Positions 34,896 through 64,000 of a stretch of DNA of 64,000 bases are shown here, one piece after another. Location of the stretch: IMG/VR virus record IMGVR_UViG_3300009545_000018, positions 383,764 through 447,763 of that record; one strand, written 5' to 3'. The notes below the pieces were generated by a model. The model was not told where the DNA came from. It searched no databases and saw only the letters and a program-made list of their open reading frames with translations. Position 1 is the stretch's first letter; each line of letters starts with the position of its first letter. The position numbers and the translations under genes were made by a program.

Positions 34896-35135
34896 TTAAA
34901 ATAGTTTCCTAATGAATTTAATTAAATTACTACCTGCTGAGTAAACAGCTAATTTTAATTCTTTTTTTCCAGCTAATTTGTGTTTAACTCCTACTGGGGA
35001 GTGATGTTTATATAATTCAGCTGCTTGCTCTGGTGTTTCTGCTAAAACTCTATAAGTAACAGTGGCTGGTAGCATACATTCAACTTTTACATCAAAATAG
35101 AACTTTTGGGGAGGTTGTAATTTATCTTGTTTCAT
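34896..35135 (-). CDS. Hypothetical protein
   Basis: 79 aa ORF coupled to its neighbours. Confidence 0.6.
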   Translation of the reverse strand: MKQDKLQPPQKFYFDVKVECMLPATVTYRVLAETPEQAAELYKHHSPVGVKHKLAGKKELKLAVYSAGSNLIKFIRKLF

Positions 35136-36697: not shown

Positions 36698-36698
36698 T

Positions 36699-37211
36699 TT
36701 ACTTTCCTGTACTACCAAATCCACTAGCTCCACGACTAGCATTCCTATTTTTACACAAGACATCATATTCTTCATTTGATATTTCTTCAACAATCATTTC
36801 TTTTCTTTTGACAGGAATAATTTGCCCCAAGGCATCCCCAAAATTAATTTCTAACTTTTTACTATTACTAAATGAAGTTTCATTATTAGTACAAATAATA
36901 GCTTCAGGTATATATTGGCAAGCTAATAATAATTCTCCTTCATAGGTTTCATCGATTGTACCATATAAACAGTGCAATCGTTTTTTACCAAATGTTGAAG
37001 ATCTTGGCTTTAATTCAAACCACCAACCCTCTGGGCAAAAAGTTCTAAAACCTAATGGAATAATAGCTTTCTCAAAAGGAGAAAGCGATAAACTTGTGGC
37101 TGCTCTTACATCCCATCCTGTGGCATGTGGCTCTGCTTTTGTTGGTAAAAACTCTTTATTATTTTTTAGATCTTCTCTTAATGCAAACTTAAAATTTGGA
37201 ATTTCTGACAT
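36699..37211 (-). CDS. dut: Trimeric dUTPase
   Basis: GWDVRA, PRSS, GTIDETYEG, RGASGFGSTG. Confidence 0.93.
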   Translation of the reverse strand: MSEIPNFKFALREDLKNNKEFLPTKAEPHATGWDVRAATSLSLSPFEKAIIPLGFRTFCPEGWWFELKPRSSTFGKKRLHCLYGTIDETYEGELLLACQYIPEAIICTNNETSFSNSKKLEINFGDALGQIIPVKRKEMIVEEISNEEYDVLCKNRNASRGASGFGSTGK

Positions 37212-41600: not shown

Positions 41601-42676
41601 ATACATATCAAAAAATAATGGCTTGTGAAGATAAATTTCAAGCTATCCAAAAAATTATCTCAATAGATGAATTTACAAGAAGACTTTCAGAAATTGATCA
41701 TATTTGTAACGATCCTACTACATGGAATGATCATAAAGCTGCCGCACGTATCATGAAAGAACGGCAAAAAATATCTGATGTAATAAGTAAATATACTTAC
41801 TTTAAAAATTGGGTTCTCTTTTTTAAAGAGATAGTAAATGAACTTCCAGAAGAAATACAATCGTTTAGCCAAGAATCTTCTACTCTGCTATCAGAATTGT
41901 CTGCATTTGAGATTAGTCAGATTTTTAAAGAAGAGTCTGATGATTTGCCTGCTATCCTCTCTATCAATGCCGGGGCTGGTGGTTTAGAGGCAGCAAATTG
42001 GGTTACTATGCTCTTACGTATGTATGCTAGATATGCCAGTAATAATAATTTCAAAGTAGAAATTTTAGACACCAAACCATCTGAAGAGCATAGTTCTATT
42101 TGTACTGATTCAGTATCTATTAGAATAGAAGGTACTTATGCTTATGGTTTTTTTAAAAGTGAGTCTGGTGTACATAGGTTAATACGTAACTCTCCATTTA
42201 GTTCAAATGATACTAGACATACATCCTTTGCTGCCGTGTCTGTTATGCCAGATATAGAAGACACTATTGATATTAATATTTTAGATAAGGATTTAGAAAT
42301 AACTGCAATGCGGGCGGGCGGTAGTGGAGGACAACATCAAAATAAAACTAATAGTGCCGTTAGATTAAAACACTTGCCAACAGGGATTAATATTGCTGTT
42401 AGAGGTGAGAGAGATTATCATCAAAATAAAAGAACAGCTATGAAGATGTTGAAAGCTAAATTATATGAAATTGAGTTAAAGAAGCAACAAGAAGAAAAGA
42501 ATAAACATTTAGATGCTATGCAAGATGTAGCTTTTGGTTCTCAAATAAGAACTTATACTATGAGTCCCACTCAAATAGTAAAAGATCATAGAACAGATTT
42601 TGAATGTAATAATACTAATAATGTTTTAGATGGAGAAATTGATGATTTTATTAGTGCCTATTTGCATATGATGTAA
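41597..42676 (+). CDS. prfB: Peptide chain release factor 2 (no internal frameshift)
   Basis: AGAGGxEA, ESGVHRLIRNSPF (SPF specificity motif), RHTSF, GGQ, FGSQIRTY. Confidence 0.93.
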   Translation: MNTYQKIMACEDKFQAIQKIISIDEFTRRLSEIDHICNDPTTWNDHKAAARIMKERQKISDVISKYTYFKNWVLFFKEIVNELPEEIQSFSQESSTLLSELSAFEISQIFKEESDDLPAILSINAGAGGLEAANWVTMLLRMYARYASNNNFKVEILDTKPSEEHSSICTDSVSIRIEGTYAYGFFKSESGVHRLIRNSPFSSNDTRHTSFAAVSVMPDIEDTIDINILDKDLEITAMRAGGSGGQHQNKTNSAVRLKHLPTGINIAVRGERDYHQNKRTAMKMLKAKLYEIELKKQQEEKNKHLDAMQDVAFGSQIRTYTMSPTQIVKDHRTDFECNNTNNVLDGEIDDFISAYLHMM

Positions 42677-47642: not shown

Positions 47643-48009
47643 TTATTCTTTATACTTTTCTCTTGTCTTTAATATTAGCAGCTTGGCTTACAGCTACCCC
47701 CAAATTACAGCTAATCCCAACTAAACATCTTCTTATATGTCCATTTTGTCTAAAACAATTGGATAAGTATGCTGTTATGTTTAGAGACTGTAATAATTTC
47801 CCTCCCCTGGAAAAATTAATCATGCTTTCTCTATGTTTGCAGAAAATTTCTATCTGATTGTTTATGCTGATGTTACTATTAAATTAGAAAAATATTATAA
47901 TTCATATTTTATCACAATCAATGATAAAATATTTACAATCCCTCCCTTCCAAGTGTGTAATAGTTTAGAGGTAATGCATAAATATTTAAAATTATTGCCC
48001 TTTTCTTAA
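47639..48009 (+). pseudogene. Frameshifted Zn-ribbon array member with N-terminal hydrophobic segment
   Basis: The CPFC frame stops at 47857; the -1 frame from TTTCCCTCCCCTGG continues to ...HKYLKLLPFS stop. Confidence 0.6.
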
Positions 48010-48053
48010 CAACATACAATATCTCGATCGCAACTTCCCTCGCGCATAAAATT

Positions 48054-49291
48054 ATGAAATGTCCCCTCTGTTATGATAGCTGTCAAACTCTCTATTCTAA
48101 TGAATTTAGATGTACTAAGTTTGATCATAGTTTCGTTTTTTCTCATCATGATTGGGCTCTCTATCATATACCATCGGATATAATTACTACAACTTATGGG
48201 CTATCGTATTATACCAGTAATAATATTATCTCCTTTGAAACGCTAAAATCCCCTGATGCTGCTATTAAAATTTTGTTAAAATTCTTAAAAATATCCGCCT
48301 TTGCCTAAAATGAATTGTCCCATTTGTCAAGCTAAACTTATAAAATATCTAAGAATCCATTAGAAGAATTGTCTTGCTATAAAATGAAAATTATCCCGTT
48401 TTCAGAGTGTTATCAAACGTTACAACGCTATATCAAGATGTCTGCCTTCCTATGAAAATTTGTCCCGTTTGTCATCAGCCACTAATAAAAGAAAAATTAG
48501 GTAGTCCCATATTTACTTCTTATTATTGTACCGAATTTGGTCATGTTGCTTCTTGGTCTTCTTCTAACAGTTGGTCATTATACTGCTATGTTAATGATTA
48601 TTTATATGCTATTATCGGCTCGGAAGATAAATGTAGTTTTATCACCTTTACTGATAATACAACAAAAGTAACAACAACGAATATTTATACTTCTTTTGAA
48701 GAGTCTTATCTGTCTATCCAACGAATGGTTAAATTATTAACTTTTATTTAAAATGAATTGCCCCCACTGTAATATAATGTGTTCTAAATCTGATCATACT
48801 TATGATTGTTTTAAAGATTTTAAACATACTTTTATCTTTTCTAACAAAAACTCTTGGTGGCTTATTATTAAATATGATAGTCTAATAGAATATCGTTTGG
48901 AAATTCATAATTCTCTTCCTACTTTTTATGTCTTTGCTAATCCTCCCTTTTCTATAGTCTTTGAATATGTAATACATGAACCCGTAATAGCAGCAAATGC
49001 TAAATCTATAATAGAAAAATATATTAATCATTATAATAAAATGAAAGCCTTTATATGAAAGAATTACCTGTTAAAAATGATAGTTATTTCTATAATGATA
49101 ATAATTGGTCTGTTTATTATGTTTTCTGTAATAAATATAAGGTAAGAATTTGCTGCATCTTAGAAAAATGTTATGTCCATATGTTGAATGAACAATACGT
49201 AACGGTAAAATGTATGCCAATTAATTCTTTAAAGTTTGATGATGCAGATTCTTTTGTTAATAGATATTTTAATTTAATGGCTTTTTATTAA
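48054..49291 (+). CDS. Last array genes (48054-48308, 48452-48751, 48753-49058, 49055-49291) plus remnant 48310-48455
   Basis: CPxC starts (absent in the last gene); tails KISAFA, KLLTFI, KMKAFI, NLMAFY; remnant ends KMSAFL. Confidence 0.75.
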
Positions 49292-49904
49292 AATATAATG
49301 TCATAGGATGCTGTCAAAGGGAGCAAAGTGTTAGAAAGTGGGAGGGTGTGGGAAGATAGCTGAATTAATGTCTTTTAATGTTTTGGCTGTCATTTGGGGT
49401 GGAATAGGATAGAAAGAGAAGATAAGTTATACTTTGATTTAGAAGGTTTAAGGAGGAAAGTAAGATTTTGGATTGGTTTGAACTGTATTATAGAGCTTAT
49501 AGATGGTTTGATGTGTTTAAAATAGCTGTAGACCGGGTCCCCAGCCGCCTCGGACCGTCAAACTCCCCACCTTTTCACTGCTGCTACAATACAGGGTTTG
49601 GCATACTCTCTGCATTATTCAATTAACATACCAATTATTCTTTTATAAGTCTTATTAATTAATTATACTTACATTACAATCATTTAATAAACATTATTAA
49701 TCATTTATGGCATCTTTCTTGCTTTCGCTGTTATTTTGCCTCACTGAACAGCTTTTCAGCCCTTTTAGTAGTCTTGGTACAGTAACTGCAAGATGCAAAG
49801 CCTATACCATGCCATAGCAGTCATTCCAGTTACACTGCACTTACCCATCTTTTAACGGTTAGTACCTGATTAATGTAGCGGGTAGCTGAGATAAGGAGAT
49901 TACT

Positions 49905-50096
49905 ATGGCACAATTCAAGATTTTGTCTCAAGTCAATGGTTCTTGGTTGGAGCAGGGGAAAGATCTCGGCGGTACTACTGTTATGAATCAAGCTGCTCAA
50001 TTGGAAAAGCAGGGATTGAATGTTCGAGTTTTCCGAACTGATATTCCCAAGTTCATTTATGAAACGGGAGCAGGATACCACGGAATCTGGTACTGA
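49905..50096 (+). CDS. First small gene of the motif block
   Basis: AAGGAG SD; follows motif 49844; ends before a terminator. Confidence 0.75.
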   Translation: MAQFKILSQVNGSWLEQGKDLGGTTVMNQAAQLEKQGLNVRVFRTDIPKFIYETGAGYHGIWY

Positions 50097-50102
50097 AAGA
50101 AT

Positions 50103-50130
50103 AAAGGAGCCTAAGGCTCCTTTTCTTTTT
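50103..50130 (+). terminator. Intrinsic terminator
   Basis: AAAGGAGCC-TAA-GGCTCCTTT with T tract. Confidence 0.85.
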
Positions 50131-50244
50131 ATCTTTGTGGTATAGGATTTGCTTATTGCAATTAATATACCAAGACTTTTTAGATAAAAGAGCTCTACCC
50201 ATCCTATAACGGAATCAAAGCAGCTATTGTAAGGTAGGTATCAT

Positions 50245-50616
50245 ATGGAATTCACCTATGAGAATGATGAAGGGGAAGACATTACAGTCACCTTCCCTAG
50301 TGTTAAGGTAGTTTGCCCAAGGTGTAAAGGGCACGGAACCCACCTTCACAATGATATTGGTAGCTATGCTTACAGCGTAGAAGAATTCCAAGATTCCTTT
50401 GATGAAGAAGAACAGGCAGAGTATTTTCGCCATGGTGGAAGATATGACGTTCTCTGCGAACGCTGTCACGGTAAAAACGTGGTGGATGAGATTGACGAAG
50501 AGAAGTGTCAGCAGGATCCGGCTTTGACAGAAGCCTGGCAAGCTTTTTGTCAGAAAGAAAAGGATGATGCTGATTATGAAAGACTCTGTGAATCAGAGCG
50601 GCGCTTTGGTTGCTGA
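50245..50616 (+). CDS. Acidic protein with CxxCxGxG Zn finger
   Basis: CPRCKGHG...CERCHGK. Confidence 0.75.
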   Translation: MEFTYENDEGEDITVTFPSVKVVCPRCKGHGTHLHNDIGSYAYSVEEFQDSFDEEEQAEYFRHGGRYDVLCERCHGKNVVDEIDEEKCQQDPALTEAWQAFCQKEKDDADYERLCESERRFGC

Positions 50617-50653
50617 TTGAGATCCCATCCTATAACGGATTACTGCTAATAGT

Positions 50654-53199
50654 ATGACAACCCTGCAGAATCTCAAGAAGCGTGACTTGTCTTTTGCTTA
50701 CCAGATTGCAGTGGCAGACTGGAAAAAACTTTCTGCTATGTGTTCTGGGCAGTCAGCTGACGATCTGGCTAATGGCTTTCATGGTAAGTCATTGGCTGGA
50801 GTGCTGTTTGATTCGGAATTGGCAGTGGATCAGATTGCAGCTAAGCTGGATCGGTTGAATCCTTAAGGGATTGAAAGGGAGGTTTACCTCCCTTTCTTTT
50901 TAATTGATGCTGGTATGCCGTTTGCATATTGCAATGTTCGAGCCAACCGTCATAAAGTTTGCTTTAAACTTGTTCCCATCTGATAACGGATAGATCCTAA
51001 TAGTATAGTTTTTCTGAGGGTTCTGACTAAAAGTAAAACCCTCCCCCTTTACGTTGCAAACAGTAACTGTAGTAGGCAATAAGCTTCCAGTTATATTGTA
51101 ACAAAGTTTGGCGGTATCTTAAAACCGCCACATTTTTTAATCCCATCATTTAACGGAAAGGTCTAAGTAATATGAATACTCTTTTTAAGTTGGTTGTTGT
51201 GATGTTGGCATTGTTTGCCGTGACTTTCTTGATTCAAACCTATGCCAATTCTTGGTTTCATCAAGTGGCATTCACGGCTCCTATCATTGGAACCATGAGC
51301 TATGCAGCTTGTACCATTGTGGCAGTAGGTTGTGTGTTGCTGTCAAAGCTGCATTGGGGCAAGTAATGTTAGGTTTCGTGGTGTTTTGCCTGGTAGGTTT
51401 TTTTACTGGGCATTGGGTAGTGGGTGGTATTATTGGAATTGTAGTATACGCCCTAAATAAGTAACTCCCATCAATAAACGGTTGAATGTTATTGATATGA
51501 CATATCATCCCAGTTACCGAGCAGTAGATTCTGTTGGTACTGAATGTGAAACTTTTGAACATGAGTATCAAGCGGTAGACTATTGGACTGGTGCTCCTAC
51601 TGGAATTGATATTCAATATTGGAATGGTTCTGAATGGGAAGAATATAATCCTAGGACTTTCACTAAAGATTAATTCCCATCAATTAACGGATTGTACCTA
51701 GTTATTGAGATGCAAAACCTAAAAGACCGATTGGAAAAGTTAGCAGATTCTTTTAAGGGTACTACCAATTCTTTTGGTAGGTTTACCGTCACCAATGTAG
51801 GTTGCGGGATTCTGAGAGTTGATGGTGAAGGTGTGCAGTATACTCCCGATGTAATATTGGGTTTTCTCAATCGACACGGCATTAAGTAATTCCCATCAAT
51901 AAACGGATTAGATCTATTAGAAAGGATAAAAAAGATGAAAGCATTCAATTGTTATATTGTCAAGCGCAAGGGCAAAGTCATCAAGGGTGAGAGTCGCAAG
52001 CTGCGCAATGCAGCCAAGCGACAACGTCAAGGTCGCTAAACCAAAAGAATGAGAGCTTAATTGTTCTCATTCTTTTTTAATTGGTCTTGGCATATGCTTT
52101 GCAACTTGCAATAAGCTTGCCAGGCGTTATATTTTTATATCCCATCTATTAACGGAAAGACATACTAAGTGGAGGCTGGTAATGTTCATTAAGATTAAAG
52201 CTTTGTTCAAGCTGTATGATCTGGGAATCATTAGCAGCGAACGTTTATCCGAAGCCTTGGTAAAGCTCTCCCCATCTGATAACGGATAAAGATTATTAAT
52301 TATGAATACTCTAGAATTCAGCCGAGCTTGCCGAACAGAGTTTGCTGCTTTGCCGGAAGCCTATCGTAATGACGATGTCTTGGAATTCTGGTTTGAGGGT
52401 GGGCTTTGGTATTGCCGCCCCAAACTATCAGAAGTAACAATTCTAGGAAACTGGGAATGTTATTATAGTGATGGTGTATGGGAGAATCAAGAAGCCCATC
52501 TTTAAACGGATGATAGGAGTCTAATATGAAAGCCAGGACTCAGTATCTGATTAATGTTTATGTCACGTTGAATAGTGCTGGTCGTAAGGATCAATTCCGC
52601 CGGGGTCGTTACAATGACCCGGAACACTCTGCCATAGCTTGGGGTGGGGTTCATGGTCCTCTTTTGGGCTGCGAACCTTCCGCTGAGGAATTGCAAGAAT
52701 TGGTAACAGAGGGTTACATTACAGTTAAGTCCAATGGCGCTGTAACTCCTACAGCTAAAGCTAAGGCGGCTAGGACTGGAAGCTTAGGCAGTATTAGTCC
52801 TTAATACCAATGAATAGTTTAGAGCCTAAAGAGACAGAAGATCAACGCAGAGCCCGATTAGCATCAAGAGAAGATCTAGCGTGTTTAGAGTGCCACCATA
52901 GGGTTTGCTTATACTTTTGCTCTAAGAGAGTTAAAAAGCGTCCCATCAAGTAACGGATTAGTGTATCTAATATGAAGTACCTAGATGAAAAGTCTGTTAC
53001 TGCAGTGCGTCGAACTAAGCCTCTAGCAGTTAGGACTAGGTCAGGATATGGGAGTAAACTTCCAACTGATATTATGCTGCAATTGAATAAGCGTTGGTAT
53101 CGGGTCTATGTGATGATCTATTCTAATGCTGGTTCGGCATATATCTTGCAAAAGGGAGAAAAGGTTTTGCTTGGGTCCTATGATCCTCAACCCATCTAA
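50654..53199 (+). CDS. Small motif-associated genes: 50654-50866, 51172-51366, 51366-51464, 51497-51673, 51710-51889, 51935-52039, 52182-52289, 52302-52505, 52526-52804, 52810-52953, 52972-53199
   Basis: Each starts just after a motif or is coupled to the previous gene; products unknown (two are hydrophobic). Confidence 0.65.
50873..50901 (+). terminator. Intrinsic terminator
   Basis: GAAAGGGAGG/CCTCCCTTTC with T tract. Confidence 0.85.
51005..51138 (+). ncRNA. Candidate small structured RNA
   Basis: ORF-free unit between motif 50975 and a terminator; stems GAGGGTT/AACCCTC, GTTGCAA/TTGTAAC, TAACTG/CAGTTA. Confidence 0.5.
51109..51138 (+). terminator. Intrinsic terminator
   Basis: TGGCGGT/ACCGCCA with T tract. 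Confidence 0.75.
52043..52078 (+). terminator. Intrinsic terminator
   Basis: AAAAGAATGAGAGC/GTTCTCATTCTTTT. Confidence 0.8.
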
Positions 53200-53210
53200 T
53201 AACGGATTCC

Positions 53211-53241
53211 AGGGGAGCTGTAATGGCTCCCTTTTCTTTTT
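53211..53241 (+). terminator. Intrinsic terminator
   Basis: GGGAGCT/GGCTCCC with T tract. Confidence 0.8.
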
Positions 53242-53330
53242 GGTGGGGTGGCAAGGCTTTTGCATATTGCAAGGCTCGTGCCACGCCCCAATAACAACCC
53301 ATCTATTAACGGATTAATAGGTATTATGTA

Positions 53331-53446
53331 TCCGATTGGTTGGCACCTTTTTAGTTAGTAGTGAAACATAATTCATTAGCTTTCACTGGCAATTAATGAA
53401 TTATGTTCTGACTAAAACTAAGGTTCGATTCCTTAGAGTCGGGCTA
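53331..53446 (+). ncRNA. tRNA-like RNA with greatly extended central arm
   Basis: CCGATT/AGTCGG acceptor-like stem, TAAGG-TTCGATT-CCTTA T-arm, long central stem. Confidence 0.55.
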
Positions 53447-53479
53447 ATTCCCATCTAATAACGGTAGAATATAATTAAT

Positions 53480-56400
53480 ATGAATCGCACTAAGCAAAAC
53501 CTAGATTCTGCTAAGATGCTGGTTGCTAAAGCTCTGGCTATTCTGGCGCAAGCTGGTTTGGCTCAACGATAGAGAAGACAATGAAAAAGCCCAATCAAGA
53601 ATTGTTTCGGCTGCTTCGTTTTGCCATTCGTTTTCCAGGCTGGCACTCTTACGATTCCAGTGTAGCTAAACATATCAAAAGGGCAGCTGCATTGGAATTT
53701 CTGGAAGTTGATACCAAAACCAAACAATTCCGATTGATGCCAAGTCAATGGGCGGAAGACTTTCGCAAAGGTCCCATCGTTTAACGGTTGAGGGTATCTA
53801 ATATGAATCTCAATAAAAGAATCAAGCTGGATCGTTCCTTCGAACTAGCAGAAGATTCTGCTAAGCCTGATATTACTGGAACCATTGTGGGCTTGGGACA
53901 TATTGTCGGCATAACAGTTTATATCGTGGAACTGGATCAAGGTTTCTATTCGCCAGATAGGCGAATCTATATTAGCAGAATGGTAGTAGCAAGGGAAAGC
54001 CTTCGTCCCATCGAATAACGGGTGAAGGTAACTAACTGGGGACTGAAACCCGAGCTGACCGAAAGGAAAAGCTCCATATAGTATTACTGGATGAGATCCT
54101 AATCCGGGTTGTAAAAGAATAACGGTTGGTACCGTTTACAATCATGTCGAAAGACCTTAGGCTGGCGAAGTAAGTCCCCATCATTTAACGGCGGAAGATT
54201 AATAACATGAGGAAAAACGCTCAAAAGGTTCTGCAAGCTTTCAATGCTGGGCAGGCTGCTAATGAGAAAACCATTAGCACCAATGGTAAGGAATTGTTTT
54301 CCTACGCCATGTTGATCGCCCGCAAGAATGGCGATAAGGTAGAGCTTATCGATTATAGTAAAGCTCCCAGCAACACTACCCGCAGTCAGGTTAACGCAGT
54401 GCGGCAATTCTTTCCTGCTAGTCAGATTGTGGTAGTGGAGAGTTTCTAAAAACAAGTTTTCCTAAAACTTGTTCCCATCCTTTAACGGAATAAGGCTCTT
54501 ACCATGAGAGTTGGTCCTGCTACACTATCCTACTTGAAACGTTTGGGCGATGAGGAAGCTGCTTTGATGTTGAAAGCCGGTTCATTGGTTTTCAGTCAAG
54601 CTCAAAAAGCAGGTTTGACGCCGGGTTTCTTTTTCATTCAAGGGCAACTGAGAATGGTGCCAGTACCCAAAACCTTTGCAGTGAGTCCCATCTTCTAACG
54701 GAAGGATCCTTCTAATATGGAAGAGTTAATGGATCGAGCCCGGGAATGGGTCAATGAGAATTATCCTCACTTGGAAGGCGATGACTATTCCGCCAAGCTA
54801 GAAGAGACACTATGGGATCTGGCGGAGATTGATGGCACGGATCCTATTAACTATCTGACTTATTATAATTAATTACACTAAAGCAATAATTGAGGTTTAA
54901 TGATTCGAGCCCCGCCGAGCTAGGCGTCTCTAATGTTTAATAATAGTTGATTGAATTTATAAGATTACAGTTTGAGAGGAATGGGGAGAAGGCGACCTTC
55001 TCCCCATTCCAATGTTATACATTGGTATAGGCTTTGCATCTTGCAATCCTTATACCAACCTTGCTATTATCTTTCCCATCCAATAACGGAAGCATTCAAT
55101 TAGATATGACAATTAGTTATCACAAGCGAGACTTGCAACATGCCCAAAAGATTGCAGAAGCAGAAAAGTACCATATCCTGAGTTTCAGTGACGGTGCAAA
55201 CTCCGCGGAGCATCTAGTTCGGGTAGTAGAACTGGAAAACGATCTTCGTCGTATCTCTCAACAATTGAATCCCATCAAGTAACGGCTAGAGACATAATAT
55301 AAGAAACATGGCAAAGTCAAACAAGTACTGTAGGGATTGTGAGTGTTATCATCCGGCAGGCGATTGTAATGGTAATGATCGTCGGCAAGATCATAAGAAG
55401 CGAGAAAAGGTCAAGCAAGCCGAAAGCCCCATGTTCTTCTATGATCAAGATCCAATGTTGATGGATCCATAAAAACCTGTTCCCATCTGATAACAGTTAA
55501 TGTAAGTGGTTGTATCATTGAACGCGGCGTAAAAGACTATAATTAATAAGGTTCACGCGGGAAAAAGATAGTCTTTCCACTTTTCCATCTAATAACGGCT
55601 CCTAGATACTAATTGAAAGAATAAAGACAATGTTTTATGTAACCAAGAATGACGCGCAATACATCATGGCTGCCCTGCTGATTCCGACCCTGCTGGGCTT
55701 TTACTCTCTCTGCCTTTACTTCTAAAAACTTAATAGGCAGTTTAGAATAGCTGCCTATCTTTCTTCCGGTTTAGCTCAGTTGGCAGGGAAACATTAATGA
55801 CAGCTAATTGGTTGCATAATGTTTCCCATCCATTAACGGTTGAAGGTGTCTAATATGACTTGGAATAAAGAACAGATTAGGATTGCCATTCAAACCCGTG
55901 ATGTTGTGGTAGAGCGTGCCATTGTTGCTATCTATCAACGTCAGACACTAGACGAACAATCCTCAGAAGAAACCAAGCATTCTAATGGAGTTGGTTTTAG
56001 TGGGGCGCATGCACGTTTGGGCACGTATTATGCCAAGTGGATTCTTCAGGGACGTCACTTAACCGGAAACCATCTAGTCAAAGCTCGTGCCATGGCATTG
56101 CATTACGTAGGACAATTAGAGCAGATTGCTGCACAAGTTTAATTCAAACTTGTTCCCATCTATTAACGGATTGATATTACTAATATGGATTACCTAACTC
56201 GTAACATTCAAGACACTGGTAGCAAAACGGTTTTGATGCCAGCCAGCCACGTTCGTGGGAGCACCATTATCTTTTGGACTTGCTGTGTGTTCTGGACCAT
56301 TGCCGCCATTGCTTATCACAGCATGCACTGAACCAAGATGCATATCTTCCTGTTAGTCATTATGGCATACTGTCATGTCTCCTGGGAATCTACCGATAGG

Positions 56401-57052
56401 GGACAGCCTGTTTATGATGCTAACGGGTATAACTACAGTGACAATGTTATCTCCTGTCATATCGATCCCATTGAGGATAATATAACAGAACAACGTCACC
56501 ATATTACTTGCTGGGGCACTGATAAGCAGGTAGTGGTAGATCGGTCCTTGCATTGTGATAAGCAGCAGATTGAAGATTACATTGAAGTGCAAAGCTTATT
56601 CTTAGGCTGTAAGTATCACTGAATGTTAGGCATTATTCTTGCCGCTGTAATTCCGATAGTAATACCAGTTATTATTAATTGTTTGGATTACTTCATAGAT
56701 TAAATCCCATCTGATAACGGAGAAGGGTTTGTAGGCATTATCAAGAGGGAATTTATATTACTGAACATTCCAATATGTTGGAGTTGATTAATCGTTGCAA
56801 TAAGCTTGCAACCTTACAGACAACTATTACATGGATGTATGTAGTTGTCTGAGTTTATAACGGCACTGTAATGGTGCCGTTTCTTTTATGCGCGTGTTGG
56901 TACGTGCTTTGCATATTGCAATAAGCTTGCCAACCATCCGTCAAGCCAAATTATTATCCCATCTAATAACGGAAGGATACACGTAAATGAAGCTAAAGTT
57001 AATAGGTCAAGGTACACACACTCGTAAGGGTGCCGCAATCTATGGCGACTAA
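53480..57052 (+). CDS. Small motif-associated genes: 53480-53572, 53581-53784, 53803-54018, 54207-54449, 54504-54698, 54717-54872, 55106-55282, 55308-55472, 55630-55725, 55855-56142, 56185-56331, 56338-56622, 56987-57052
   Basis: Starts re-assigned to the ATG about 15 nt after each motif where present; products unknown. Confidence 0.65.
54037..54180 (+). ncRNA. Candidate multi-stem structured RNA
   Basis: Closing stem TGGGGACT/AGTCCCCA, GAAA tetraloops, several nested stems. Confidence 0.6.
54978..55010. terminator. 15-bp perfect hairpin without a U tract
   Basis: GGAATGGGGAGAAGG-CGA-CCTTCTCCCCATTCC. Confidence 0.6.
56736..56887 (+). ncRNA. Candidate small structured RNA
   Basis: ORF-poor unit after motif 56706; GTTGCAA/TTGCAAC and CAGACAACTA/TAGTTGTCTG hairpins, then a terminator. 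Confidence 0.4.
56859..56887 (+). terminator. Intrinsic terminator
   Basis: AACGGCAC/GTGCCGTT with T tract. Confidence 0.8.
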
Positions 57053-57149
57053 TCCACATAGGTTGTTCTGATTAGAGAATAGCTTTAAAAGCTCCGAACA
57101 CTTTAGCTTCCCATCCTATAACGGTTTCATACTCTGATTGAGATACACA

Positions 57150-57518
57150 ATGAAGATCGAATGTACCACTGAGGAATTGGTAGCGCTGCAACGTACCACG
57201 GAACTGGAATCCTTGCAATATGAAGTAGTAGCATTGCGAGAACGGAATTCTTCCCTGGAAGATCGGATCGCTAACCTGAAGGATCACAACACTGACCTAC
57301 AGCGGGAATTGGTGAAGCCGGCAGCTACTATTAATGGCGCCAGTATGCAGCAAGTTTCGGATCTGTTCAAGGTATACTTGGGTGGTGCCAATAGGGAAAC
57401 CCCTATTGGAGCCCAAAAGATCGCTGCTATCAAAGCCGTTCGTGAAGTTTTCAAGTGCGGATTAAGGGAAGCCAAGTTTATCATTGAAGGTAACTTGGAA
57501 AACGAGCGATACGGCTGA
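57150..57518 (+). CDS. Coiled-coil protein with ribosomal protein bL12 (L7/L12) C-terminal-like domain
   Basis: KIAAIKAVREVFKCGLREAKFIIE matches the bL12 KIxxIKxVRxxxGxGLKEAKxxVE signature. Confidence 0.7.
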   Translation: MKIECTTEELVALQRTTELESLQYEVVALRERNSSLEDRIANLKDHNTDLQRELVKPAATINGASMQQVSDLFKVYLGGANRETPIGAQKIAAIKAVREVFKCGLREAKFIIEGNLENERYG

Positions 57519-57556
57519 ATAAACTTCCCATCCTTTAACGGTTGATTGCATTCAAT

Positions 57557-60500
57557 ATGGATCCTGAGCAATTGATTCAGCAAAGCGCGGCTTCTGGGGA
57601 AACCATCAAGATTGATTGGAATGTCAAAGTGTTTTCTCACTTGATGCGCCGGTCTCCTATTTACACCGAATATACAACCTTCACGGAATTCCAGGGTAAA
57701 GAATTGGATAAGTCCTGGTGTATCCAATTGATACATTAACCCATCCTTTAACGGTTAGAGACACCTAACATGACATTCGATAAAGGACAGCGAGTCAACA
57801 CTCCTAATGGTCTTGGTACTATTAATTACCAAAGGATGGTACCGCCCGATTACAGTGAAGCTATGATAGTTTCTGTCTTTCTGGATTCTCGCCAATTGGA
57901 TCGGGACTTGGGAAAGTATTCTGGAACTATCTTTCCGGCAGATGTTGTTACTCCCATCCAATAACGGACTACTAATAATAGTATAAGACAAATGGTAAAA
58001 ACCAACCACCATAACGAATGGTTTCGACCCGTTACCAAAACCACTTGCTCTTGCGGTCAAAAGAAAACGCAAGTTTATAGTTGGGGAGAATATGTGTGTG
58101 CCAAGTGGCGCACCATTGACTATGTGTGTCAAAACTGTTTTCCGATTGTAAGCGAACGTTTACAGCAGCATAAAAAGGAATGCGGCTGTGAATTTAAGCT
58201 AATTGGTTATCGCGGCTGTAGTTTGCCTGACTGGCTTAAAATGCCTGTGCAATCTTGCCAGTTTTCCCATCAAGTAACGGTTGAAGATGTCTAATATGAC
58301 TAAGCAACAAGCTCTGCAGGACTTTAAAGAAAACGTACTGCCGGCAGTCAAACAGCAATATCCACATGATAAGCATGCTGTTATTCAAGCTTGGAATGAT
58401 TACACTGACAGCTTGTGTAAAGACCGGCAGATTACCGCCAAGCAATACCATAACTGGTCCAATCCTTTTTGAGCCTCATGTCTAAGTGTGAACATGTATT
58501 TCCACGTGTAGCTAATTACGAGTTATTAGGCACTGGTGGCAAAAGGATTATATGGTCCTGCAATAACTGTCTTTCCATCAAGGTTCACTTCATTAATGAT
58601 GTAAAAGTTAATGATAAATGGACTACATATGAAAAAACAGTCATAGTAGACTGTTTAGATTACGATCCTGATCCCATCCAGTAACGGTTAGGTACAACCA
58701 ATATGACAACTATGTATCTAATACGCGATACCACTGGCAAGATATTGTCGAGTTGCTCTTTCAATTCCGTTGCAGCTTTATGTGAAGCAGTTAAGGTCTG
58801 GCATTATTTGGGCAACATTAGCGCCGATAGCTATGGTGTTGTAGTTATCTTTTAGTTCCCATCCTATAACGGCTAGGTACAATTAATATGAGCCAGTTAT
58901 CCGAAGCCCTAAAAAAAGTCGCTGCTATTGCATCTTCTACCTACCTAGGAGAAGAGACTGAAAAGTATAGTCAAGGCAGCGGTACTTACAAGGTTAATAA
59001 GTGGAAAGTAGAATTGTCTTTCCAGGGGCGCCGATATACTTGTCCCTTATATAAGACAGGTGAAGGTCTTCGAAAGAAAAAGTACAGCTTTAATAGCAAG
59101 CTGGGACAATGGGGTAATTTTCCCGTTGCAGGATCAAACCACCCTGATGTAGCTGACGTTATTCATTGTCTGATTACTGATACTCATTGCGGCATGATGG
59201 CATTCGACGAGTATTGCAGCGAGTTTGGACTTGATACTGATTCCCGTGCTGCTTTCAAAGTGTGGGAGCAATGCGTGGAAACTGCTGGACCTTTTAGACG
59301 GTTTCTAGGTTCGGAGTTTGATCATCTGTCAATGTTGGAACACTAATGAAAACTTACAGGCTCAAAGAAAACCATCCCACCTATCAGAAATTTCTTAAGC
59401 TATATAATCTAGCTGAGAAGTTAGGTATCTCTCTTGAATTTATTGGAGATCAATGTTTTTTGGTAGATTTTGATCTGCCTAAGATACGGTTTCAAGTGAA
59501 AGATATAGAGCCTAATCATATCTTAACTTCGTTTCCTTATCCAACGGAATTTGAGATTACATATCAGAAGCCCCATCCATAGACGGAAGTGTGTATTTAA
59601 TATGCGCAACTATCAAAGCATGATTGAGCGACGAAAAGCGGAATTCCAAGATCATTTCTCGGATGTTGGATTGTCCAAACAGTTCATTCAATATTACGAG
59701 AATGGCAAGCGTATCAAGGTGCGGTTTCCCGATGGTCGTACAGAGTGCGGTACCGTTGGAGTTACAACCGGTTGGGTCCCTTGCTTTCTGCTAATGCATC
59801 GCAGTACTGATACTGGAAGCTCTACAGTCTTGGCAGACATGGATAAGATTGTGGGCGTGCAAGTCAGTAAGAAGTACGTTACGCCGTGAATGGAAAAGGA
59901 GCATCTGCTCCTTTTCATTTTGCCCAATATGGTATGTGCTTTGCATATTGCAGCATTCGTACCACTACCTCCGGGGCAAAAAACAAACTCCCATCACATA
60001 ACGGGTTGATACTAAAGGTAAGAGATATGAAAGTTAAAGTGTTTCCCGTCAATGGCAGCTATACTATCTGTGCGGTTTTACCTAACGGCAGCATGGATCC
60101 GCATTATCCTGCTATTACGGATATTGCGCATCATGGTAATGCGCAATACATTGCGGACAGAATCAATGAGGCTTATCGGGCGGGTGAAACCAATAAAGCC
60201 ATTGAGATTCGAAAAGTCTTGGGTCTTTTATATTAATCCCATCTTCTAACGGATGAATGCAATTAATATGGCAAAACAATATCCCTGTGATGGTTTTACT
60301 CGACTCACAGAAGAATCAGACTTGGTTCCAGGTACCGTGCTTCGCATGGTTAACTTTATCGATAACCCTGCTGTTAGCGCTCCCTTTTCCGATTGTGTCA
60401 TTACTAAAGTAGAAGATGGTATTGTCTACCTGAATCGTCCCATGGGATGGTCCAATGGCAAAACTCATACAGAAGAGTTTTGTGCCTACACTACCAGGGT

Positions 60501-62428
60501 TGTCAAGTTCTGGCATACTGTACTGACCGCTAGTGGTAAGCCTTATAGTATGTTTGGGGTGTAGTTCCCATCCTGTAACGGAACCAGTATATTAATTATG
60601 GATAGATTTACAAGGTGTCTGCTACTAGGTCTATTCTTCTTTGTTCTAAACGTTCTTTTATATAAGATGTTTAGGTTGGTTTATTGGGAACGTACAGTCA
60701 TTACCTCTATAGTAGCACTTTATGTCGGTTGGTTTCATGGCAGTTGGTTTTTCAAAAAAAGAAATAAACCCATCCAGTAACGGATATTATCTTCCTATTG
60801 TAAGAAAGTAAAAGACAATGGAAATTCTTTCTCATTCTCGCAGTGTTAAGGTAGAACAATACAGCTTGTGTTTCGATTATATCGGAGCCAGCAAGCATCA
60901 TGGTTTCTCGTTTGACTGCAATGCAGCTGGAGAAGTAGATGTTGTGGCTTTGCAGAAAAAGCCGGCAGCATATGATAACTATCTGAAATGTCTGTCAGGC
61001 GAGCATAAGGTTCATGCTCCTTACGTTCAGGACTTTTCGCATCGTTATACCGAGCCGGCAGTAGGTCGGTGTGTCTGCGGCTGCAAAGTAGAATTGGCTC
61101 GTTTTACCAATACCTGCGATGGTTGCAATCGGGATTACAATTACAGCGGAGATCTTTTGGCACATAGAAGCCAATGGGGTGAGGAAACTGGGGAAAGCTA
61201 CTGTGATATTCAGGACCTGTAATGAAAAAGCGCAATCGCTGTAAGTGTAAAAAGTGTGGTACGATTATTGAATCCAAACATCGGCATGACTTTGTTTACT
61301 GTAGATGTAAGTCCATTTTCACTGATGGTGGAACTGATTACATTAGAAGGGGAGGAGATCTTTCTTTAATTGAGGAAGTTCCAGAAGATAACAACATCTC
61401 CTAACGGAATATATTATGAGTTACGAACTAAGCTTCAGTGAAACATTCTTCTTCGGCGAATGTGATCCCTACGAAACTGACATTACTGCAACACCTACCA
61501 GTGTGTATGCTGCTATCTGCTGCTGTAAGGAACTGGATCCTGACAAGTGGCAAGACATTGCAGCGGAAGTCTTTCAAGTAGAGCCGGATCTATTGACAGA
61601 GGAAGCTGTCATGAGAAAGATTCGTAAAACCGACACATGTTCTAACTTGAACGTGCCTGTACGGGTGTGGATAGATGAACAGGGTTGGTATAAACTAGAA
61701 GTGTATTGATCCCATCTGATAACGGTGGAGCATATCTAATATGAAGATTACAGCAGATCGTTTCAGTGAGCTATCTCTTTCGATTCAAGATCAAGCCACT
61801 AGTCTTTACAATAAGGCTTTTCGTTTGGGCTTTAATGCCGAGCTTGGCGCTAAAGATGGTGGCACTGAAACTGTCATTAGCATGATTACGGAACTGGAAT
61901 CTACCTTGCGGGTATTGAAACGACGCCTGCAGGAAACCCTCCCATCCTCTAACGGGTAGAGATACTTATTATGCAAGCCAGTCTTTGTGATTCAGATTGC
62001 AGTGAAAATGCTGTCATAGCAATCCTTCAAGGTGAAGGTGCTGCTAAGTTTGCCAAAGAGACATGTCAATCGCTCAATGGTAGCAACTGGGAATGTGATG
62101 GCAATGATTTTGCCTATTGTCTCACGGAAAACTGTCCAAGCTTATTGGAAGAATTCCAAAAAGACTTGGGCGATATTGAGATAAACGATTCTGAGTATAC
62201 TCCCATCACATAACGGATAATAAATATAATATGTTAACTCAAAAGGGAATGGAAATTCTGTTGAAGATGTATTCTCTACATCGCAGCAATTTCTTAGAAA
62301 CTCATGATGGTTGCAATCGGAATGATTGCGAGCGGGATTTTCTCCATAACATTCTGTCGAAAGTTTCCGGTAGTTATAACGAAATTGTCTATGCCAAGTT
62401 AGCTAACGAGATTGAAAGCATTCGATGA
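57557..62428 (+). CDS. Small motif-associated genes: 57557-57739, 57770-57964, 57992-58294, 58296-58472, ~58478-58684, 58703-58855, 58888-59346, 59346-59582, 59602-59889, 60027-60236, 60268-60564, 60598-60780, 60818-61222, 61222-61404, 61416-61709, 61741-61959, 61971-62213, 62231-62428
   Basis: Same unit architecture; several are Cys-rich Zn-binding peptides (57992, 60818, 61222). Confidence 0.7.
59893..59921 (+). terminator. Intrinsic terminator
   Basis: GAAAAGGAGC/GCTCCTTTTC then ATTTT. Confidence 0.75.
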
Positions 62429-62823
62429 AAGCTGTACTACTAGGATTGTTACTGTTAGGTTGCGGAGATCATGATAATCCTCCTCCGGAAGCCCCTAAGT
62501 TTTGCATTCAACCCGCCGCCACTTATGTAGAAAGTTTTAGTCCGGTCTATGGTAGTTGTCCAGGTTTACCATCAGTTTTGATTACCATTCCGGAAGATGG
62601 AAGTTTTCCAATCAATACGGATGAAACCTGTCATGTTAAGGTAGATGGTTGCAAGGCAGACAATACTGGGTGCGTGTATCAGAGTGACGGCTGCACTATC
62701 AAGTCTGATACCACTGTCACCTTTAAGGATGATGGTACTGCAGTAGGCTATATGACAGTATCGACAGCTAAGTGTGGATACGACTGTATGGGTATCTATG
62801 AGTTGTACTTAGTTAAGCAATAA
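62425..62823 (+). CDS. Cys-rich lipoprotein
   Basis: MKAVLLGLLLLG-C lipobox. Confidence 0.75.
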   Translation: MKAVLLGLLLLGCGDHDNPPPEAPKFCIQPAATYVESFSPVYGSCPGLPSVLITIPEDGSFPINTDETCHVKVDGCKADNTGCVYQSDGCTIKSDTTVTFKDDGTAVGYMTVSTAKCGYDCMGIYELYLVKQ

Positions 62824-62825
62824 CT

Positions 62826-63776
62826 ATGGAACTGGTAAAGTTAGGCGCTAAGCAAGGCACAGAATGCTGTACCTGTAGAAACAGGATTAAGCATAACGAG
62901 ATCTGTTATCGAAAACAACGCTTAGCCGAAACTTATCACGAACGATTACATGCTAACGGTAAAGGCATGGTTCAATGGTACCATCACAAGTCATGCATTG
63001 AAAAAATTCCCATCTGATAACGGATACCTACGAGTAATATGAGTAGCAAATGCACAGTTAAGAAAGCCAAAGAGTTGAATGCCTATGACATTAAATTCAA
63101 GCTAACGCAGGGAGAATTAATTGCATTGTACAATGCATTAAAACGATATTCCTCTGCTTCTACTGGAGGCGCGGCTGTACACGCTTATCTGTGTAATAGT
63201 TTGCAAGAGCTGTCTGTGGAACATGGCGTCAAGTTTCCCATCGACTAACGGAAGAGCTTATTTAATATGCTAAGTATGAAGGTAGAGACGGTTGTTAACG
63301 CACTAGTTACTCAATTGCTGTCAACGGATCTATATAATGAAGCAATTCATTTCCACTTGGATTGCCGGCTCAATTACTTTGAGGATGGCAAGCGTAATTA
63401 TCGAACGGCACGCGCCTTGCATTTGCTATATCAGCGTCATACGGGAAGCACCTATATCAGTGCCTTTTCTGCTGTCTTGGATAATCCATTCGATAAGATT
63501 GATAAGGTCAAAGATTGGAATCATGAATGCACTCATGACTACTGCTGGCGTAGTGTAAACTGTTTCTCTGCCGTCTATTTTTCTATGGCAGAAGATATTA
63601 ATCGTCAGTTGGTAAAAGCTGGATTGTCGGAAGTAGCACCCATTGATATGAGAGAGTTTAACTCTTTTGGTGGCATTAGCGGAAATGTTTTCCAATTGGT
63701 TCCAGTCAAGGTAGAACTGGATCCTACAGACAAGAATCATCATAGAAGGATGATAACAGTTTCTCCCATCCTTTAA
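62826..63776 (+). CDS. Three small genes (62826-63017, 63039-63248, 63267-63776)
   Basis: All end inside the next motif (IPI, FPID, SPIL). Confidence 0.7.
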
Positions 63777-63810
63777 CGGAATAGTGCTTAGATTATTACC
63801 AGGAAAGTAA

Positions 63811-64000
63811 ATGAATTATATTAAATTAAGTGTGTTGCAAACATTGGTTTTCTTGATCTGTGCAGTTGCTTGTGGGCAAACTCTGCAAACTACAAGCTTC
63901 TCCGAAGGAGGCAGTAATTCTGCCATTGGTGGCGAGTCTGGAAACCCAGCTATGCTGTCAATGTCTGGTGGAGTAGCAGAAGATCCATCTGTCGGGGGCG
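63811..64000 (+). CDS. Putative lipoprotein, 3'-truncated by window edge
   Basis: MNYIKLSVLQTLVFLICAVA-CGQ followed by a Gly/Ser-rich linker; AGGA SD. Confidence 0.6.
   Translation, partial: MNYIKLSVLQTLVFLICAVACGQTLQTTSFSEGGSNSAIGGESGNPAMLSMSGGVAEDPSVGG

What the first reader, a model, noticed from the sequence alone, without database searches (positions are those of the whole stretch)
50103..60004. Repeated three-part junction: terminator, double sigma54 dyad, CCCATC motif
Seen in seven places, always in this order within about 110 bp: 50103/50138/50198, 50873/50911/50975, 52043/52088/52141, 53211/53249/53298, 54978/55023/55075, 56859/56898/56958, 59893/59930/59990. The three remaining dyads cluster before the first motif of the block. 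Inference: the block has a two-level grammar in which dyads mark the starts of multi-unit segments and motifs mark individual genes. The dyad could load or recruit polymerase for the downstream motif promoters, or insulate the segments.
Basis: partly seen in the sequence, partly recalled or inferred. Interest (0 to 1): 0.72.

Follow-up and report, generated by a model that had tools for sequence, protein, structure and literature searches.

The report
Repeated promoter-terminator junctions in a megaphage
A 448-kb soil phage punctuates a GC-rich block of about 90 small genes with a terminator hairpin, a palindrome of two opposed sigma-54-type promoter sequences and a 15-base signal 30 bases before each start codon; distant relatives keep the same punctuation, so it looks like an undescribed way of running phage gene expression.

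Summary
All seven terminator / dyad / CCCATC triplets are at the stated coordinates.

**Per-gene motif.** T-CCCATC-N3-TAACGG occurs 46 times in the window and 92 times in the 447,763-bp phage genome. Every copy is on the + strand.

**Dyad.** The 35-bp dyad occurs 11 times. All copies lie in one GC-rich block (about 42% GC against 30% elsewhere) that runs off the window end into the start of the record.

- Each half fits the sigma-54 -24/-12 consensus, including positions my search left free.
- The gene-facing half is better kept.
- It is not a hairpin.

**Relatives.** Four related megaphages share a sigma-70-family protein at 73-77% identity. Three of them (G1, G2, G5) keep clustered dyads, a CCCAT core and a GC-rich block; G1 and G5 also keep the start codon at +30, and G2 the terminator before the dyad. 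G3 has clustered dyads and a few motif copies.

**Reading.** The motif most likely works in transcription, as a promoter. It also heads three tRNA genes and a terminator-ended non-coding RNA. It can follow a terminator by 3 nt, and it is avoided on the antisense strand. The dyad is best read as a sigma-54-type promoter or holoenzyme-binding site at operon heads.

**Limits.** The phage encodes no sigma-54 and no activator, the host is unknown, and no RNA data exist.

The parts
49599..64000 (+). GC-rich block of small co-oriented genes. It continues past the window end into genome 1 to about 12,300 at high density, and sparsely to 76 kb.
   Evidence: GC is 0.37-0.42 here against about 0.30 elsewhere. 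All motifs and dyads lie in it.
49844..63779 (+). 46 copies of the per-gene element T-CCCATC-N3-TAACGG. The start codon is usually exactly 30 nt after the first C.
   Evidence: Coordinates are listed. The spacing peak is 37 of 91 at +30.
49599..49633 (.). Leading dyad 1, with no terminator before it.
49708..49723 (+). Single gene-facing sigma-54-type site between the leading dyads.
   Evidence: 0 mismatches
49775..49809 (.). Leading dyad 2. The first motif follows 34 nt after it.
50103..50123 (+). Intrinsic terminator of junction 1. It is also terminator-like on the - strand.
50138..50172 (.). Dyad of junction 1.
50198..50212 (+). Motif of junction 1.
50873..50896 (+). Terminator of junction 2.
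50911..50945 (.). Dyad of junction 2.
50975..51138 (+). Motif of junction 2, heading a non-coding structured unit that ends in terminator 51109-51130 plus a T-run.
   Evidence: There is no ORF. The fold z-score is -3.4.
51142..51156 (+). Motif 3 nt after the T-run of terminator 51109-51138, with no dyad.
   Evidence: There is no room for another promoter.
52046..52073 (+). Terminator of junction 3.
   Evidence: -17.8 kcal/mol
52088..52122 (.). Dyad of junction 3.
52141..52155 (+). Motif of junction 3.
53191..53205 (+). Orphan motif. It encodes the last codons and stop of ORF 52972-53199 and is followed at once by a terminator.
53211..53233 (+). Terminator of junction 4.
53249..53283 (.). Dyad of junction 4.
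53298..53449 (+). Motif of junction 4, heading a non-coding tRNA-like unit with a T-arm-like hairpin whose 7-nt loop reads UUCGAUU.
   Evidence: The fold z-score is -5.05. ARAGORN calls it only at relaxed settings.
54978..55010 (+). 15-bp hairpin of junction 5, with no T-run.
55023..55057 (.). Dyad of junction 5.
55075..55089 (+). Motif of junction 5.
55733..55758 (+). Terminator without a dyad. The next motif is 66 nt downstream.
56859..56881 (+). Terminator of junction 6.
56898..56932 (.). Dyad of junction 6.
56958..56972 (+). Motif of junction 6.
59894..59915 (+). Terminator of junction 7.
59930..59964 (.). Dyad of junction 7.
59990..60004 (+). Motif of junction 7.

Best explanation
The junction is the operon boundary of a densely regulated block of small genes, probably the early or host-takeover genes, in a 448-kb phage that has no RNA polymerase of its own.

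1. Shown: an intrinsic terminator ends the upstream unit.
2. Shown at sequence level, inferred as function: it is followed within 8-16 nt by a 35-bp palindrome made of two opposed, overlapping sigma-54-type -24/-12 promoter sequences. The gene-facing half is the better kept one. I read it as a sigma-54-holoenzyme site that restarts or gates transcription at the head of each multi-gene segment.
3. Positions shown, function inferred: T-CCCATC-N3-TAACGG, whose first C lies 30 nt before the start codon, is a lineage-specific single-block promoter. It gives each gene, some tRNAs and some small RNAs their own transcription start, with a leader of roughly 10-18 nt. It would be read by host polymerase with an unidentified specificity factor.

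The rest of the genome uses a different, extended -10-like element (TGWTATAW).
For: Reality and grammar.

Sigma-54 reading:
- Both strands fit TGGYAY-N5-TTGCW.
- In 53 dyads from six phages, found with a pattern that left positions 4-7 free, those positions came out Y-A-Y-R as in TGGCACG.
- The gene-facing half is better in 24 dyads and worse in 7, with 14 against 43 mismatches in total, p=0.003.
- Mirrored spacer positions pair only at chance level, so it is a DNA site and not a hairpin.

Conservation:
- 39 IMG/VR loci carry the dyad.
- Relatives G1, G2, G3 and G5 share the sigma-70-family protein at 73-77% identity.
- G1, G2 and G5 keep clustered dyads, a CCCAT core and a GC-rich block. G1 and G5 also keep the +30 start-codon peak.

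Motif as a transcription signal:
- It precedes tRNA-Leu by 38 nt, tRNA-Arg by 49 nt and tRNA-Leu by 92 nt.
- It heads a terminator-ended non-coding unit and a tRNA-like unit.
- It sits 3 nt after a terminator's T-run.
- The core hexamer (CCCATC, or CCCATT in G1 and G5) is 10-20 times enriched on the sense strand and depleted on the antisense strand, 8 observed against 31 expected, p=7e-7.
- Sigma-70-type sites are not enriched in the block.
- TGWTATAW is absent from the block's two 20-kb bins.

No own polymerase.
Against: - The phage and four relatives tested have no sigma-54 DNA-binding domain and no enhancer-binding ATPase.
- The host is unknown, so it may lack sigma-54.
- The palindromic form has no match in 596 Gb of bacterial and archaeal genomes. 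It is therefore not an ordinary bacterial promoter layout.
- In one 41-kb phage, tandem dyads precede the terminase operon, not early genes.
- In relative G2 half of the 181 CCCATC copies lie inside long ORFs in all three frames. This is odd for a promoter.
- No -35-like element accompanies the motif.
- No RNA run could be listed, so no 5' end is known.
- 'Early' rests only on gene size, ORFan content and composition.
Confidence: 0.5

Rival explanations
1. The dyad is the operator of a phage-encoded dimeric or tetrameric DNA-binding protein, acting as a repressor, an insulator or a roadblock that backs up the terminator. It would read four TKGCA pentamers. The likeness to sigma-54 promoters would be coincidence.
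For: - Strict two-fold symmetry, with 0 matches in 596 Gb of cellular genomes against 39 viral loci.
- No sigma-54 or activator in the phages.
- In another phage family the dyads sit next to TGCCA-N5-TGGCA palindromes that reuse the same pentamer.
- The dyad abuts the terminator's T-run.
Against: - The -24-like and -12-like elements have different flanks (YR after TGGCA, W after TTGCA), as in sigma-54 sites.
- The gene-facing half is consistently the better kept one. A symmetric operator does not predict this.
- No protein family is shared by all dyad-bearing loci. The one family shared by five loci is absent from this phage.
- The dyad occurs in phages with local GC from 33 to 59%. This suggests a widely conserved reader.
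Confidence: 0.3
2. CCCATC-N3-TAACGG acts in the RNA, as a cleavage site that cuts polycistronic transcripts into units or as a standby or enhancer site for ribosomes. The dyads would then be the only promoters.
For: - Exact 30-nt spacing to the start codon in three phages.
- The motif often overlaps the upstream stop codon in a fixed frame.
- Segments run dyad-to-terminator.
- Intragenic copies in G2 would be harmless for an enhancer.
Against: - The motif heads tRNA genes and non-coding units, which are not translated.
- It follows strong terminators with no dyad and no room for a promoter.
- About nine motif-led genes after the terminator at genome 8,696 have no dyad at all.
- Antisense avoidance is expected for a DNA signal.
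- A cleavage site every 190 nt inside G2 genes would destroy the mRNAs.
Confidence: 0.2
3. The junctions are mainly recombination cassettes, like the PeSLs of T4-type phages. Repeated terminator and promoter modules would drive gain, loss and shuffling of small genes, with regulation as a side effect.
For: - The architecture matches composite terminator/promoter cassettes in hyperplastic regions (PMC4122927).
- The genes are mostly ORFans.
- An orphan motif lies directly before terminator 53211.
- Block proteins are poorly conserved between relatives, while the sigma factor is 73-77% identical.
Against: - This is not exclusive of a regulatory role.
- The only close copy (L046) is 99.985% identical, so no indel at a junction could be observed.
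Confidence: 0.3
4. The CCCAT core is an orientation signal read on DNA. It could be a Chi-like anti-nuclease site or a signal for a translocating machine, including transcription-driven genome entry. Its place before genes would be secondary.
For: - One-strand bias, antisense avoidance and high density regardless of reading frame in G2.
- The block starts abruptly with a cluster of dyads.
Against: - Exact +30 phasing to start codons in three phages.
- Isolated copies before tRNA genes far from the block.
- The genome termini are unknown.
Confidence: 0.08

Closest known systems
PeSLs (promoter-early stem-loops) of T4-type phages (PMC2839356, PMC4122927)
   Same: Small composite terminator-plus-promoter modules, repeated between small variable genes in one orientation in a plastic region.
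   Different: - The PeSL promoter is a sigma-70 early promoter.
- Here there are two non-sigma-70 elements at two levels, a sigma-54-like palindrome per segment and a CCCAT element per gene.
- A recombination role is not shown here.
Sigma-54 (RpoN) dependent -24/-12 promoters
   Same: TGGCAC-N5-TTGCW sequence and spacing, including the weaker Y and R positions. Location at heads of transcription units.
   Different: - Always a palindrome of two opposed overlapping sites.
- No upstream enhancer recognised, and no activator or sigma-54 in the phage.
- No such palindrome found in the 185,579 species genomes scanned.
- I found no report of phage promoters of this type in the paper library.
Single-block phage-specific promoters, such as the T4 late promoter TATAAATA read through gp55 (from my own knowledge)
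   Same: A short element without a -35 partner, close to the start codon, repeated before many genes of one class.
   Different: - The sequence is unrelated.
- The reader protein is unidentified.
- The phage's one detectable sigma factor is a conventional two-domain sigma-70-family protein.
E. coli sigma-32 -10 element CCCCATWT (PMC6687850)
   Same: The CCCAT core, with CCCATT in relatives G1 and G5.
   Different: No CTTGAA -35 element at any spacing. Flanking bases differ.
Host-takeover module of Bacillus phage SPO1 (from my own knowledge)
   Same: A cluster of many small genes packed with repeated promoters and terminators.
   Different: SPO1 uses strong host sigma-A promoters. There are no dyads and no composition shift.

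Membership tests
Sigma-54-dependent promoter | GG at -24 and GC at -12 within TGGCAC-N5-TTGCW, with fixed spacing. | tested here: met
   Positions 4-7 were not imposed by the pattern and follow Y-A-Y-R.
Sigma-54-dependent promoter | A sigma-54 protein is available, from the phage or the host. | tested here: inconclusive
   The Sigma54_DBD domain is absent from the phage and from four relatives tested. The host is unknown.
Sigma-54-dependent promoter | An AAA+ enhancer-binding activator, usually with upstream binding sites. | tested here: not met
   No Sigma54_activat domain in the phage or relatives. The only weak hit is a MoxR-like ATPase by my reading of its sequence. A host activator cannot be excluded.
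Sigma-54-dependent promoter | Transcription start about 12 nt downstream of the GC. | not testable with these tools
   No RNA run could be listed.
PeSL-type terminator/promoter cassette | A stem-loop terminator directly followed by a promoter, repeated among small variable genes. | tested here: met
PeSL-type terminator/promoter cassette | The promoter is a sigma-70 early promoter. | tested here: not met
   Sigma-70-like sites number 64 against 57 expected.
PeSL-type terminator/promoter cassette | Indels between close relatives end at the cassettes. | tested here: inconclusive
   The only close copy is 99.985% identical.
Intrinsic terminator | A GC-rich hairpin followed by a T-run. | tested here: met
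   Six of the seven junction hairpins. 54978-55010 lacks the T-run.
Sigma-32 heat-shock promoter | -10 CCCCATWT together with -35 CTTGAA. | tested here: not met
   Only the CCCAT core matches. Nothing is conserved upstream.
Promoter of a phage-encoded RNA polymerase | The phage encodes a single-subunit or multisubunit RNA polymerase. | tested here: not met
   No PF00940 or PF00562 hit. No DFDGD motif in any frame. Caveat: the PF00940 control rang nowhere.

The most novel reading that the evidence does not exclude
Phages of several unrelated lineages, from roughly 40-kb phages to 480-kb megaphages, may use the host's sigma-54 holoenzyme through a virus-specific palindromic double -24/-12 site, without encoding an activator.

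Two forms are possible:
- Promoters fired by a host enhancer-binding protein that infection stress switches on.
- Silent, tightly bound holoenzyme complexes that insulate neighbouring operons.

In this megaphage clade the dyad is coupled to a second, unknown promoter class (CCCAT core) that runs a compositionally distinct gene block.
Probability: 0.25. Interest if true: 0.85.

Novelty: new variant of a known kind. Interest (0 to 1): 0.66.

Why it matters
**An unreported promoter class in phages.** Sigma-54 promoters cannot fire without an ATP-driven activator, and I found no report of phage promoters of this class in the library searched. A virus-specific palindromic form appears in 39 viral contigs and in none of 185,579 species genomes. 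That would be either a new way for phages to tap or park host polymerase, or a new operator family that mimics it.

**Three regulatory vocabularies in one uncultivated megaphage.** The genome separates into dyads, CCCAT elements and TGWTATAW elements. The gene block carrying the first two is 10-20 GC points richer than the rest of the genome in four relatives.

**Directly testable.** This gives a readable map of transcription units for a clade with no cultured member. The sequences are short enough for reporter and footprint tests.

Tried and rejected
- **Hairpin reading of the dyad:** rejected. Spacer positions pair at chance and the arms never covary.
- **Chance or assembly artefact:** rejected. 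The same sequence is in a second contig and a DNA run.
- **Rfam:** nothing at E <= 1 above noise in 48,000-64,000.
- **RNA evidence:** none was listed.
- **Cultured relatives:** no DNA or protein match for the block or for the sigma factor in 50,697 phage records.
- **Own-type 15-nt motif elsewhere in IMG/VR:** only single matches, which I judge chance-level, apart from the same phage.
- **Host identification:**
  - PhoH and RF2 homologues are too distant.
  - The sigma factor hits one contig of a 1.2-Mb 'Gammaproteobacteria' MAG at 52%, with no dyads there.
  - Shine-Dalgarno use is intermediate.
- **A protein shared by dyad-bearing phages:** one family of about 60 aa occurs in five loci but is absent here.
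- **Stop-codon recoding:** not supported. Code 11 already gives 0.85-0.99 coverage outside the block.
- **Dyads at the left end of terminal-repeat phages:** I withdrew this idea once the contig coordinates showed arbitrary starts.
Full report
**Setting**

The window is the last 64 kb of a 447,763-bp IMG/VR virus record rated complete. Overall GC is 31%. A DNA run from a rhizosphere metagenome holds the sequence.

The first 44 kb of the window carry ordinary large-phage genes:
- ribonucleotide reductase
- a PIN-PhoH fusion
- collagen-like fibre proteins
- an IMP dehydrogenase/GMP reductase-family protein
- an RF2-like release factor (best tblastn matches are annotated RF2)

From 49,599 onward the character changes. 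Genes are small, tightly packed and all on the + strand, and GC rises to about 0.37-0.42.

**Check of the observation**

- The pattern CCCATC-N4-AACGG gives 46 matches in the window, all on the + strand, against 0.26 expected.
- The palindrome TGG-N8-TTGCA-N3-TGCAA-N8-CCA gives 9 matches against 0.29 expected.
- The 'three remaining dyads' are two full dyads (49,599 and 49,775) and one single site (49,708), ahead of the first motif at 49,844.
- Genome-wide there are 92 motifs on the + strand (up to one mismatch) and none on the - strand.
- There are 11 dyads, all between genome 433,362 and 8,144 across the record's ends. The block therefore continues beyond the window. It is dense to about 12.3 kb and sparse to 76 kb.
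- Ten of 11 dyads have a motif 45-100 nt downstream. Random placement gives a mean of 1.8 and never more than 7 in 20,000 trials.
- Eight of 11 dyads have a strong hairpin plus T-run starting 8-16 nt upstream, against 8 of 300 random positions.
- The hairpin at 54,978 is very stable but lacks a T-run.
- Segments between junctions hold 2 to 11 motif-led units.

**Anatomy of the per-gene element**

The conserved block is T-CCCATC-N3-TAACGG-(A).
- The ten bases before it are A/T-rich, and nothing resembling a -35 element lies upstream.
- The start codon lies exactly 30 nt after the first C in 37 of 91 copies, and at +31 in 8 more. A TAAT box sits just before the ATG.
- The motif often supplies the upstream gene's last codons and stop, as CCC ATC NNN TAA. 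Of 43 well-supported upstream frames, 27 end inside the motif in this frame, at motif positions 10-12 (22 cases) or 7-9 (5 cases).

**Why I read the motif as a transcription signal**

- It precedes genes that are not translated. The full motif lies 38 nt before tRNA-Leu(UAA) at genome 12,053 and 92 nt before tRNA-Leu(UAG) at 76,113. A one-mismatch copy lies 49 nt before tRNA-Arg(UCU) at 71,786. The last two are isolated copies far from the block.
- In the window, the motif at 50,975 heads an ORF-less, well-folded unit that ends in the terminator at 51,109 (z = -3.4). The motif at 53,298 heads a tRNA-like unit (z = -5.05).
- The motif at 51,142 begins 3 nt after the T-run of that terminator. 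This leaves no room for another promoter. The terminators at 55,733 and at genome 15,157 are likewise followed by a motif and not by a dyad.
- The core hexamer (CCCATC here and in G2, CCCATT in G1 and G5) is 10-20 times enriched on the sense strand in four phages. On the antisense strand it is depleted, with 8 observed against 31 expected (p = 7e-7). This is expected for a DNA signal that would be harmful if it pointed backwards.
- Sigma-70-type promoter matches are not enriched in the block, with 64 found against 57 expected.

**Anatomy of the dyad**

- Read on either strand, it is TGGYAY-N5-TTGCW, the -24/-12 layout of sigma-54 promoters, with the correct spacing.
- I collected 53 dyads from this phage and five other megaphages using a pattern that fixed only TGG, TTGCA, TGCAA and CCA. 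The free positions 4-7 still came out C/T, A, T/C, A/G, as in TGGCACG.
- The half that faces the genes is closer to the consensus in 24 dyads and further in 7. Total mismatches are 14 against 43 (sign test p = 0.003).
- Mirrored positions in the two 5-nt spacers pair at chance level (15-30%). The arms are conserved rather than covarying. The element is therefore read as double-stranded DNA and not as an RNA or DNA hairpin.
- The predicted gene-facing start would fall about 8 nt before the right end of the dyad (inference from the known geometry of sigma-54 promoters).
- The gap from the dyad to the motif varies between 14 and 58 nt with no helical phasing. This argues against the dyad acting as a positioned activator site for the motif.

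**What the phage brings itself**

- No sigma-54 DNA-binding domain and no sigma-54 activator domain. The only weak ATPase hit looks MoxR-like by my reading of its sequence.
- No T7-type polymerase family hit, no Rpb2 domain, and no DFDGD catalytic motif in any frame.
- One sigma-70-family protein of 209 aa, encoded just upstream of the window (genome 382,573-383,202). It is a conventional two-domain sigma.
- The phage therefore depends on host polymerase.

**A third regulatory vocabulary**

Outside the block a different upstream element, TGWTATAW, is enriched before genes.
- It lies 14-20 nt before several tRNA genes and 15-17 nt before about 19 start codons. This is the geometry of an extended -10 promoter giving leaderless transcripts.
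- It is absent from the two 20-kb bins that hold the dense part of the block.
- So the genome has three separate sets of signals. Which one the phage sigma reads is unknown.

**Relatives**

- An IMG/VR scan for the dyad found 39 loci. I estimate the chance expectation for this roughly 40-bit pattern at well below one.
- The same pattern found nothing in 596 Gb of bacterial and archaeal genomes.
- Five hits lie in records of 210-481 kb, each with 5-14 dyads clustered in one region. Four of them (G1, G2, G3, G5) carry the sigma factor at 73-77% identity. The fifth (G4) lacks it and also lacks the CCCAT element.
- Block proteins are only sporadically and weakly similar between these phages. The punctuation is kept all the same:
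  - G1 and G5 use gCTCCCATTCAC, and G2 uses CCCATC.
  - The start codon peaks at exactly +30 in G1 (16 of 51) and G5 (11 of 43).
  - Nine of 12 G2 dyads follow a terminator.
  - The first CCCAT usually lies 7-39 nt after the dyad.
- In G1, G2 and G5, as here, the block is 10-20 GC points richer than the rest of the genome, with an abrupt rise at its start.
- G2 is odd. Half of its 181 CCCATC copies lie inside long ORFs, in all three frames. No explanation offered here accounts well for that.
- The dyad also occurs in small phages. In a 44-kb genome, four dyads and a single gene-facing site fill a 900-bp non-coding region. In a 41-kb genome, tandem dyads precede the terminase operon, whose large subunit resembles those of podophages of Proteobacteria. 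The dyad is therefore not tied to one temporal class.

**Interpretation**

The grammar is shown. How it works is inferred.

I favour the following reading:
- the terminator ends the upstream unit;
- the sigma-54-type site stands at the head of each segment;
- the CCCAT element acts as a per-gene promoter for host polymerase, with an unidentified specificity factor.

That the block is early or host-takeover rests on three points:
- small ORFan genes;
- a composition unlike the AT-rich remainder of the genome;
- 37 phage tRNAs, mostly for A/U-ending codons, of which three carry the motif.

The main rival for the dyad is an operator for an unknown symmetric phage protein. The absence of sigma-54 and activator genes, and the virus-only distribution of the palindrome, fit that view. 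The asymmetry of conservation and the sigma-54-like flanks do not.

Sigma-54 holoenzyme is known to sit on DNA in a transcriptionally inactive state (abstract of PMC4591121, shown).

**Comparison with known systems**

- The closest described architecture is the PeSL cassette of T4-type phages (PMC4122927). Its promoter is a sigma-70 type, which was tested here and not met.
- The CCCAT core resembles the E. coli sigma-32 -10 element CCCCATWT (PMC6687850). The -35 partner is absent.
- Three literature searches found no report of sigma-54-type phage promoters.

Noticed in passing
window 49,599-64,000 and genome 1-20,000; L050-L055: The dyad/CCCAT block is 10-20 GC points richer than the rest of the genome in this phage and in relatives G1, G2 and G5. 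The rise at its start is abrupt and the decline is gradual.
   Followed up: partly
G000:C1:12015-12137, 71737-71861, 76021-76198: The block's motif also stands 38, 49 and 92 nt before tRNA-Leu(UAA), tRNA-Arg(UCU) and tRNA-Leu(UAG). Two of these are isolated copies far from the block.
   Followed up: yes
G000 genome 20,000-430,000: A second upstream element, TGWTATAW, lies 14-20 nt before several tRNA genes and 15-17 nt before about 19 start codons. This suggests extended -10 promoters with leaderless transcripts. It is absent from the two 20-kb bins holding the dense part of the block.
   Followed up: partly
window 53309-53449: Non-coding unit with a T-arm-like hairpin (7-nt loop UUCGAUU), an acceptor-like stem and a long extra hairpin (z = -5.05). 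ARAGORN calls it only at relaxed thresholds, so it may be a decayed or unusual tRNA.
   Followed up: partly
window 50986-51138: ORF-less, well-folded unit (z = -3.4) between a motif and an intrinsic terminator. It is a candidate small RNA gene.
   Followed up: partly
window 49,844-63,779: The motif often encodes the upstream protein's C-terminus and stop (CCC ATC NNN TAA, that is Pro-Ile-X-stop). Of 43 upstream frames, 27 end inside the motif in this frame.
   Followed up: partly
L050-L052 (G002:C1:245,000-280,000): In relative G2 the bare hexamer CCCATC occurs about every 190 nt on the coding strand. This includes 11 copies inside one 744-aa ORF, in all three frames. It is unexplained.
   Followed up: partly
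G000:C1:212881-213035 and window 41597-42676: Two adjacent tRNAs with anticodon CUA (amber suppressors) and a phage RF2-like release factor. Even so, standard code 11 already gives 0.85-0.99 coding coverage outside the block, so recoding is not evident.
   Followed up: partly
window 57138-57518: Small block protein with a coiled-coil N-terminus and a C-terminal stretch matching the ribosomal L7/L12 C-terminal domain (E = 3.6e-6).
   Followed up: no
L016:2806-2992, L017:3000-3180, L030:6913-7342, L039:6157-6343, L047:3372-3564: A protein family of about 60 aa is shared by five dyad-bearing phages of very different size. It is absent from this genome.
   Followed up: partly
L022:9736-12300 (also L036, L042): In another phage family each dyad is followed by two copies of a 15-bp palindrome of the form TGCCA-N5-TGGCA, which reuses the dyad's pentamer.
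   Followed up: no
window 35132-36793: A 553-aa ORF carries a LAGLIDADG homing-endonuclease domain.
   Followed up: no
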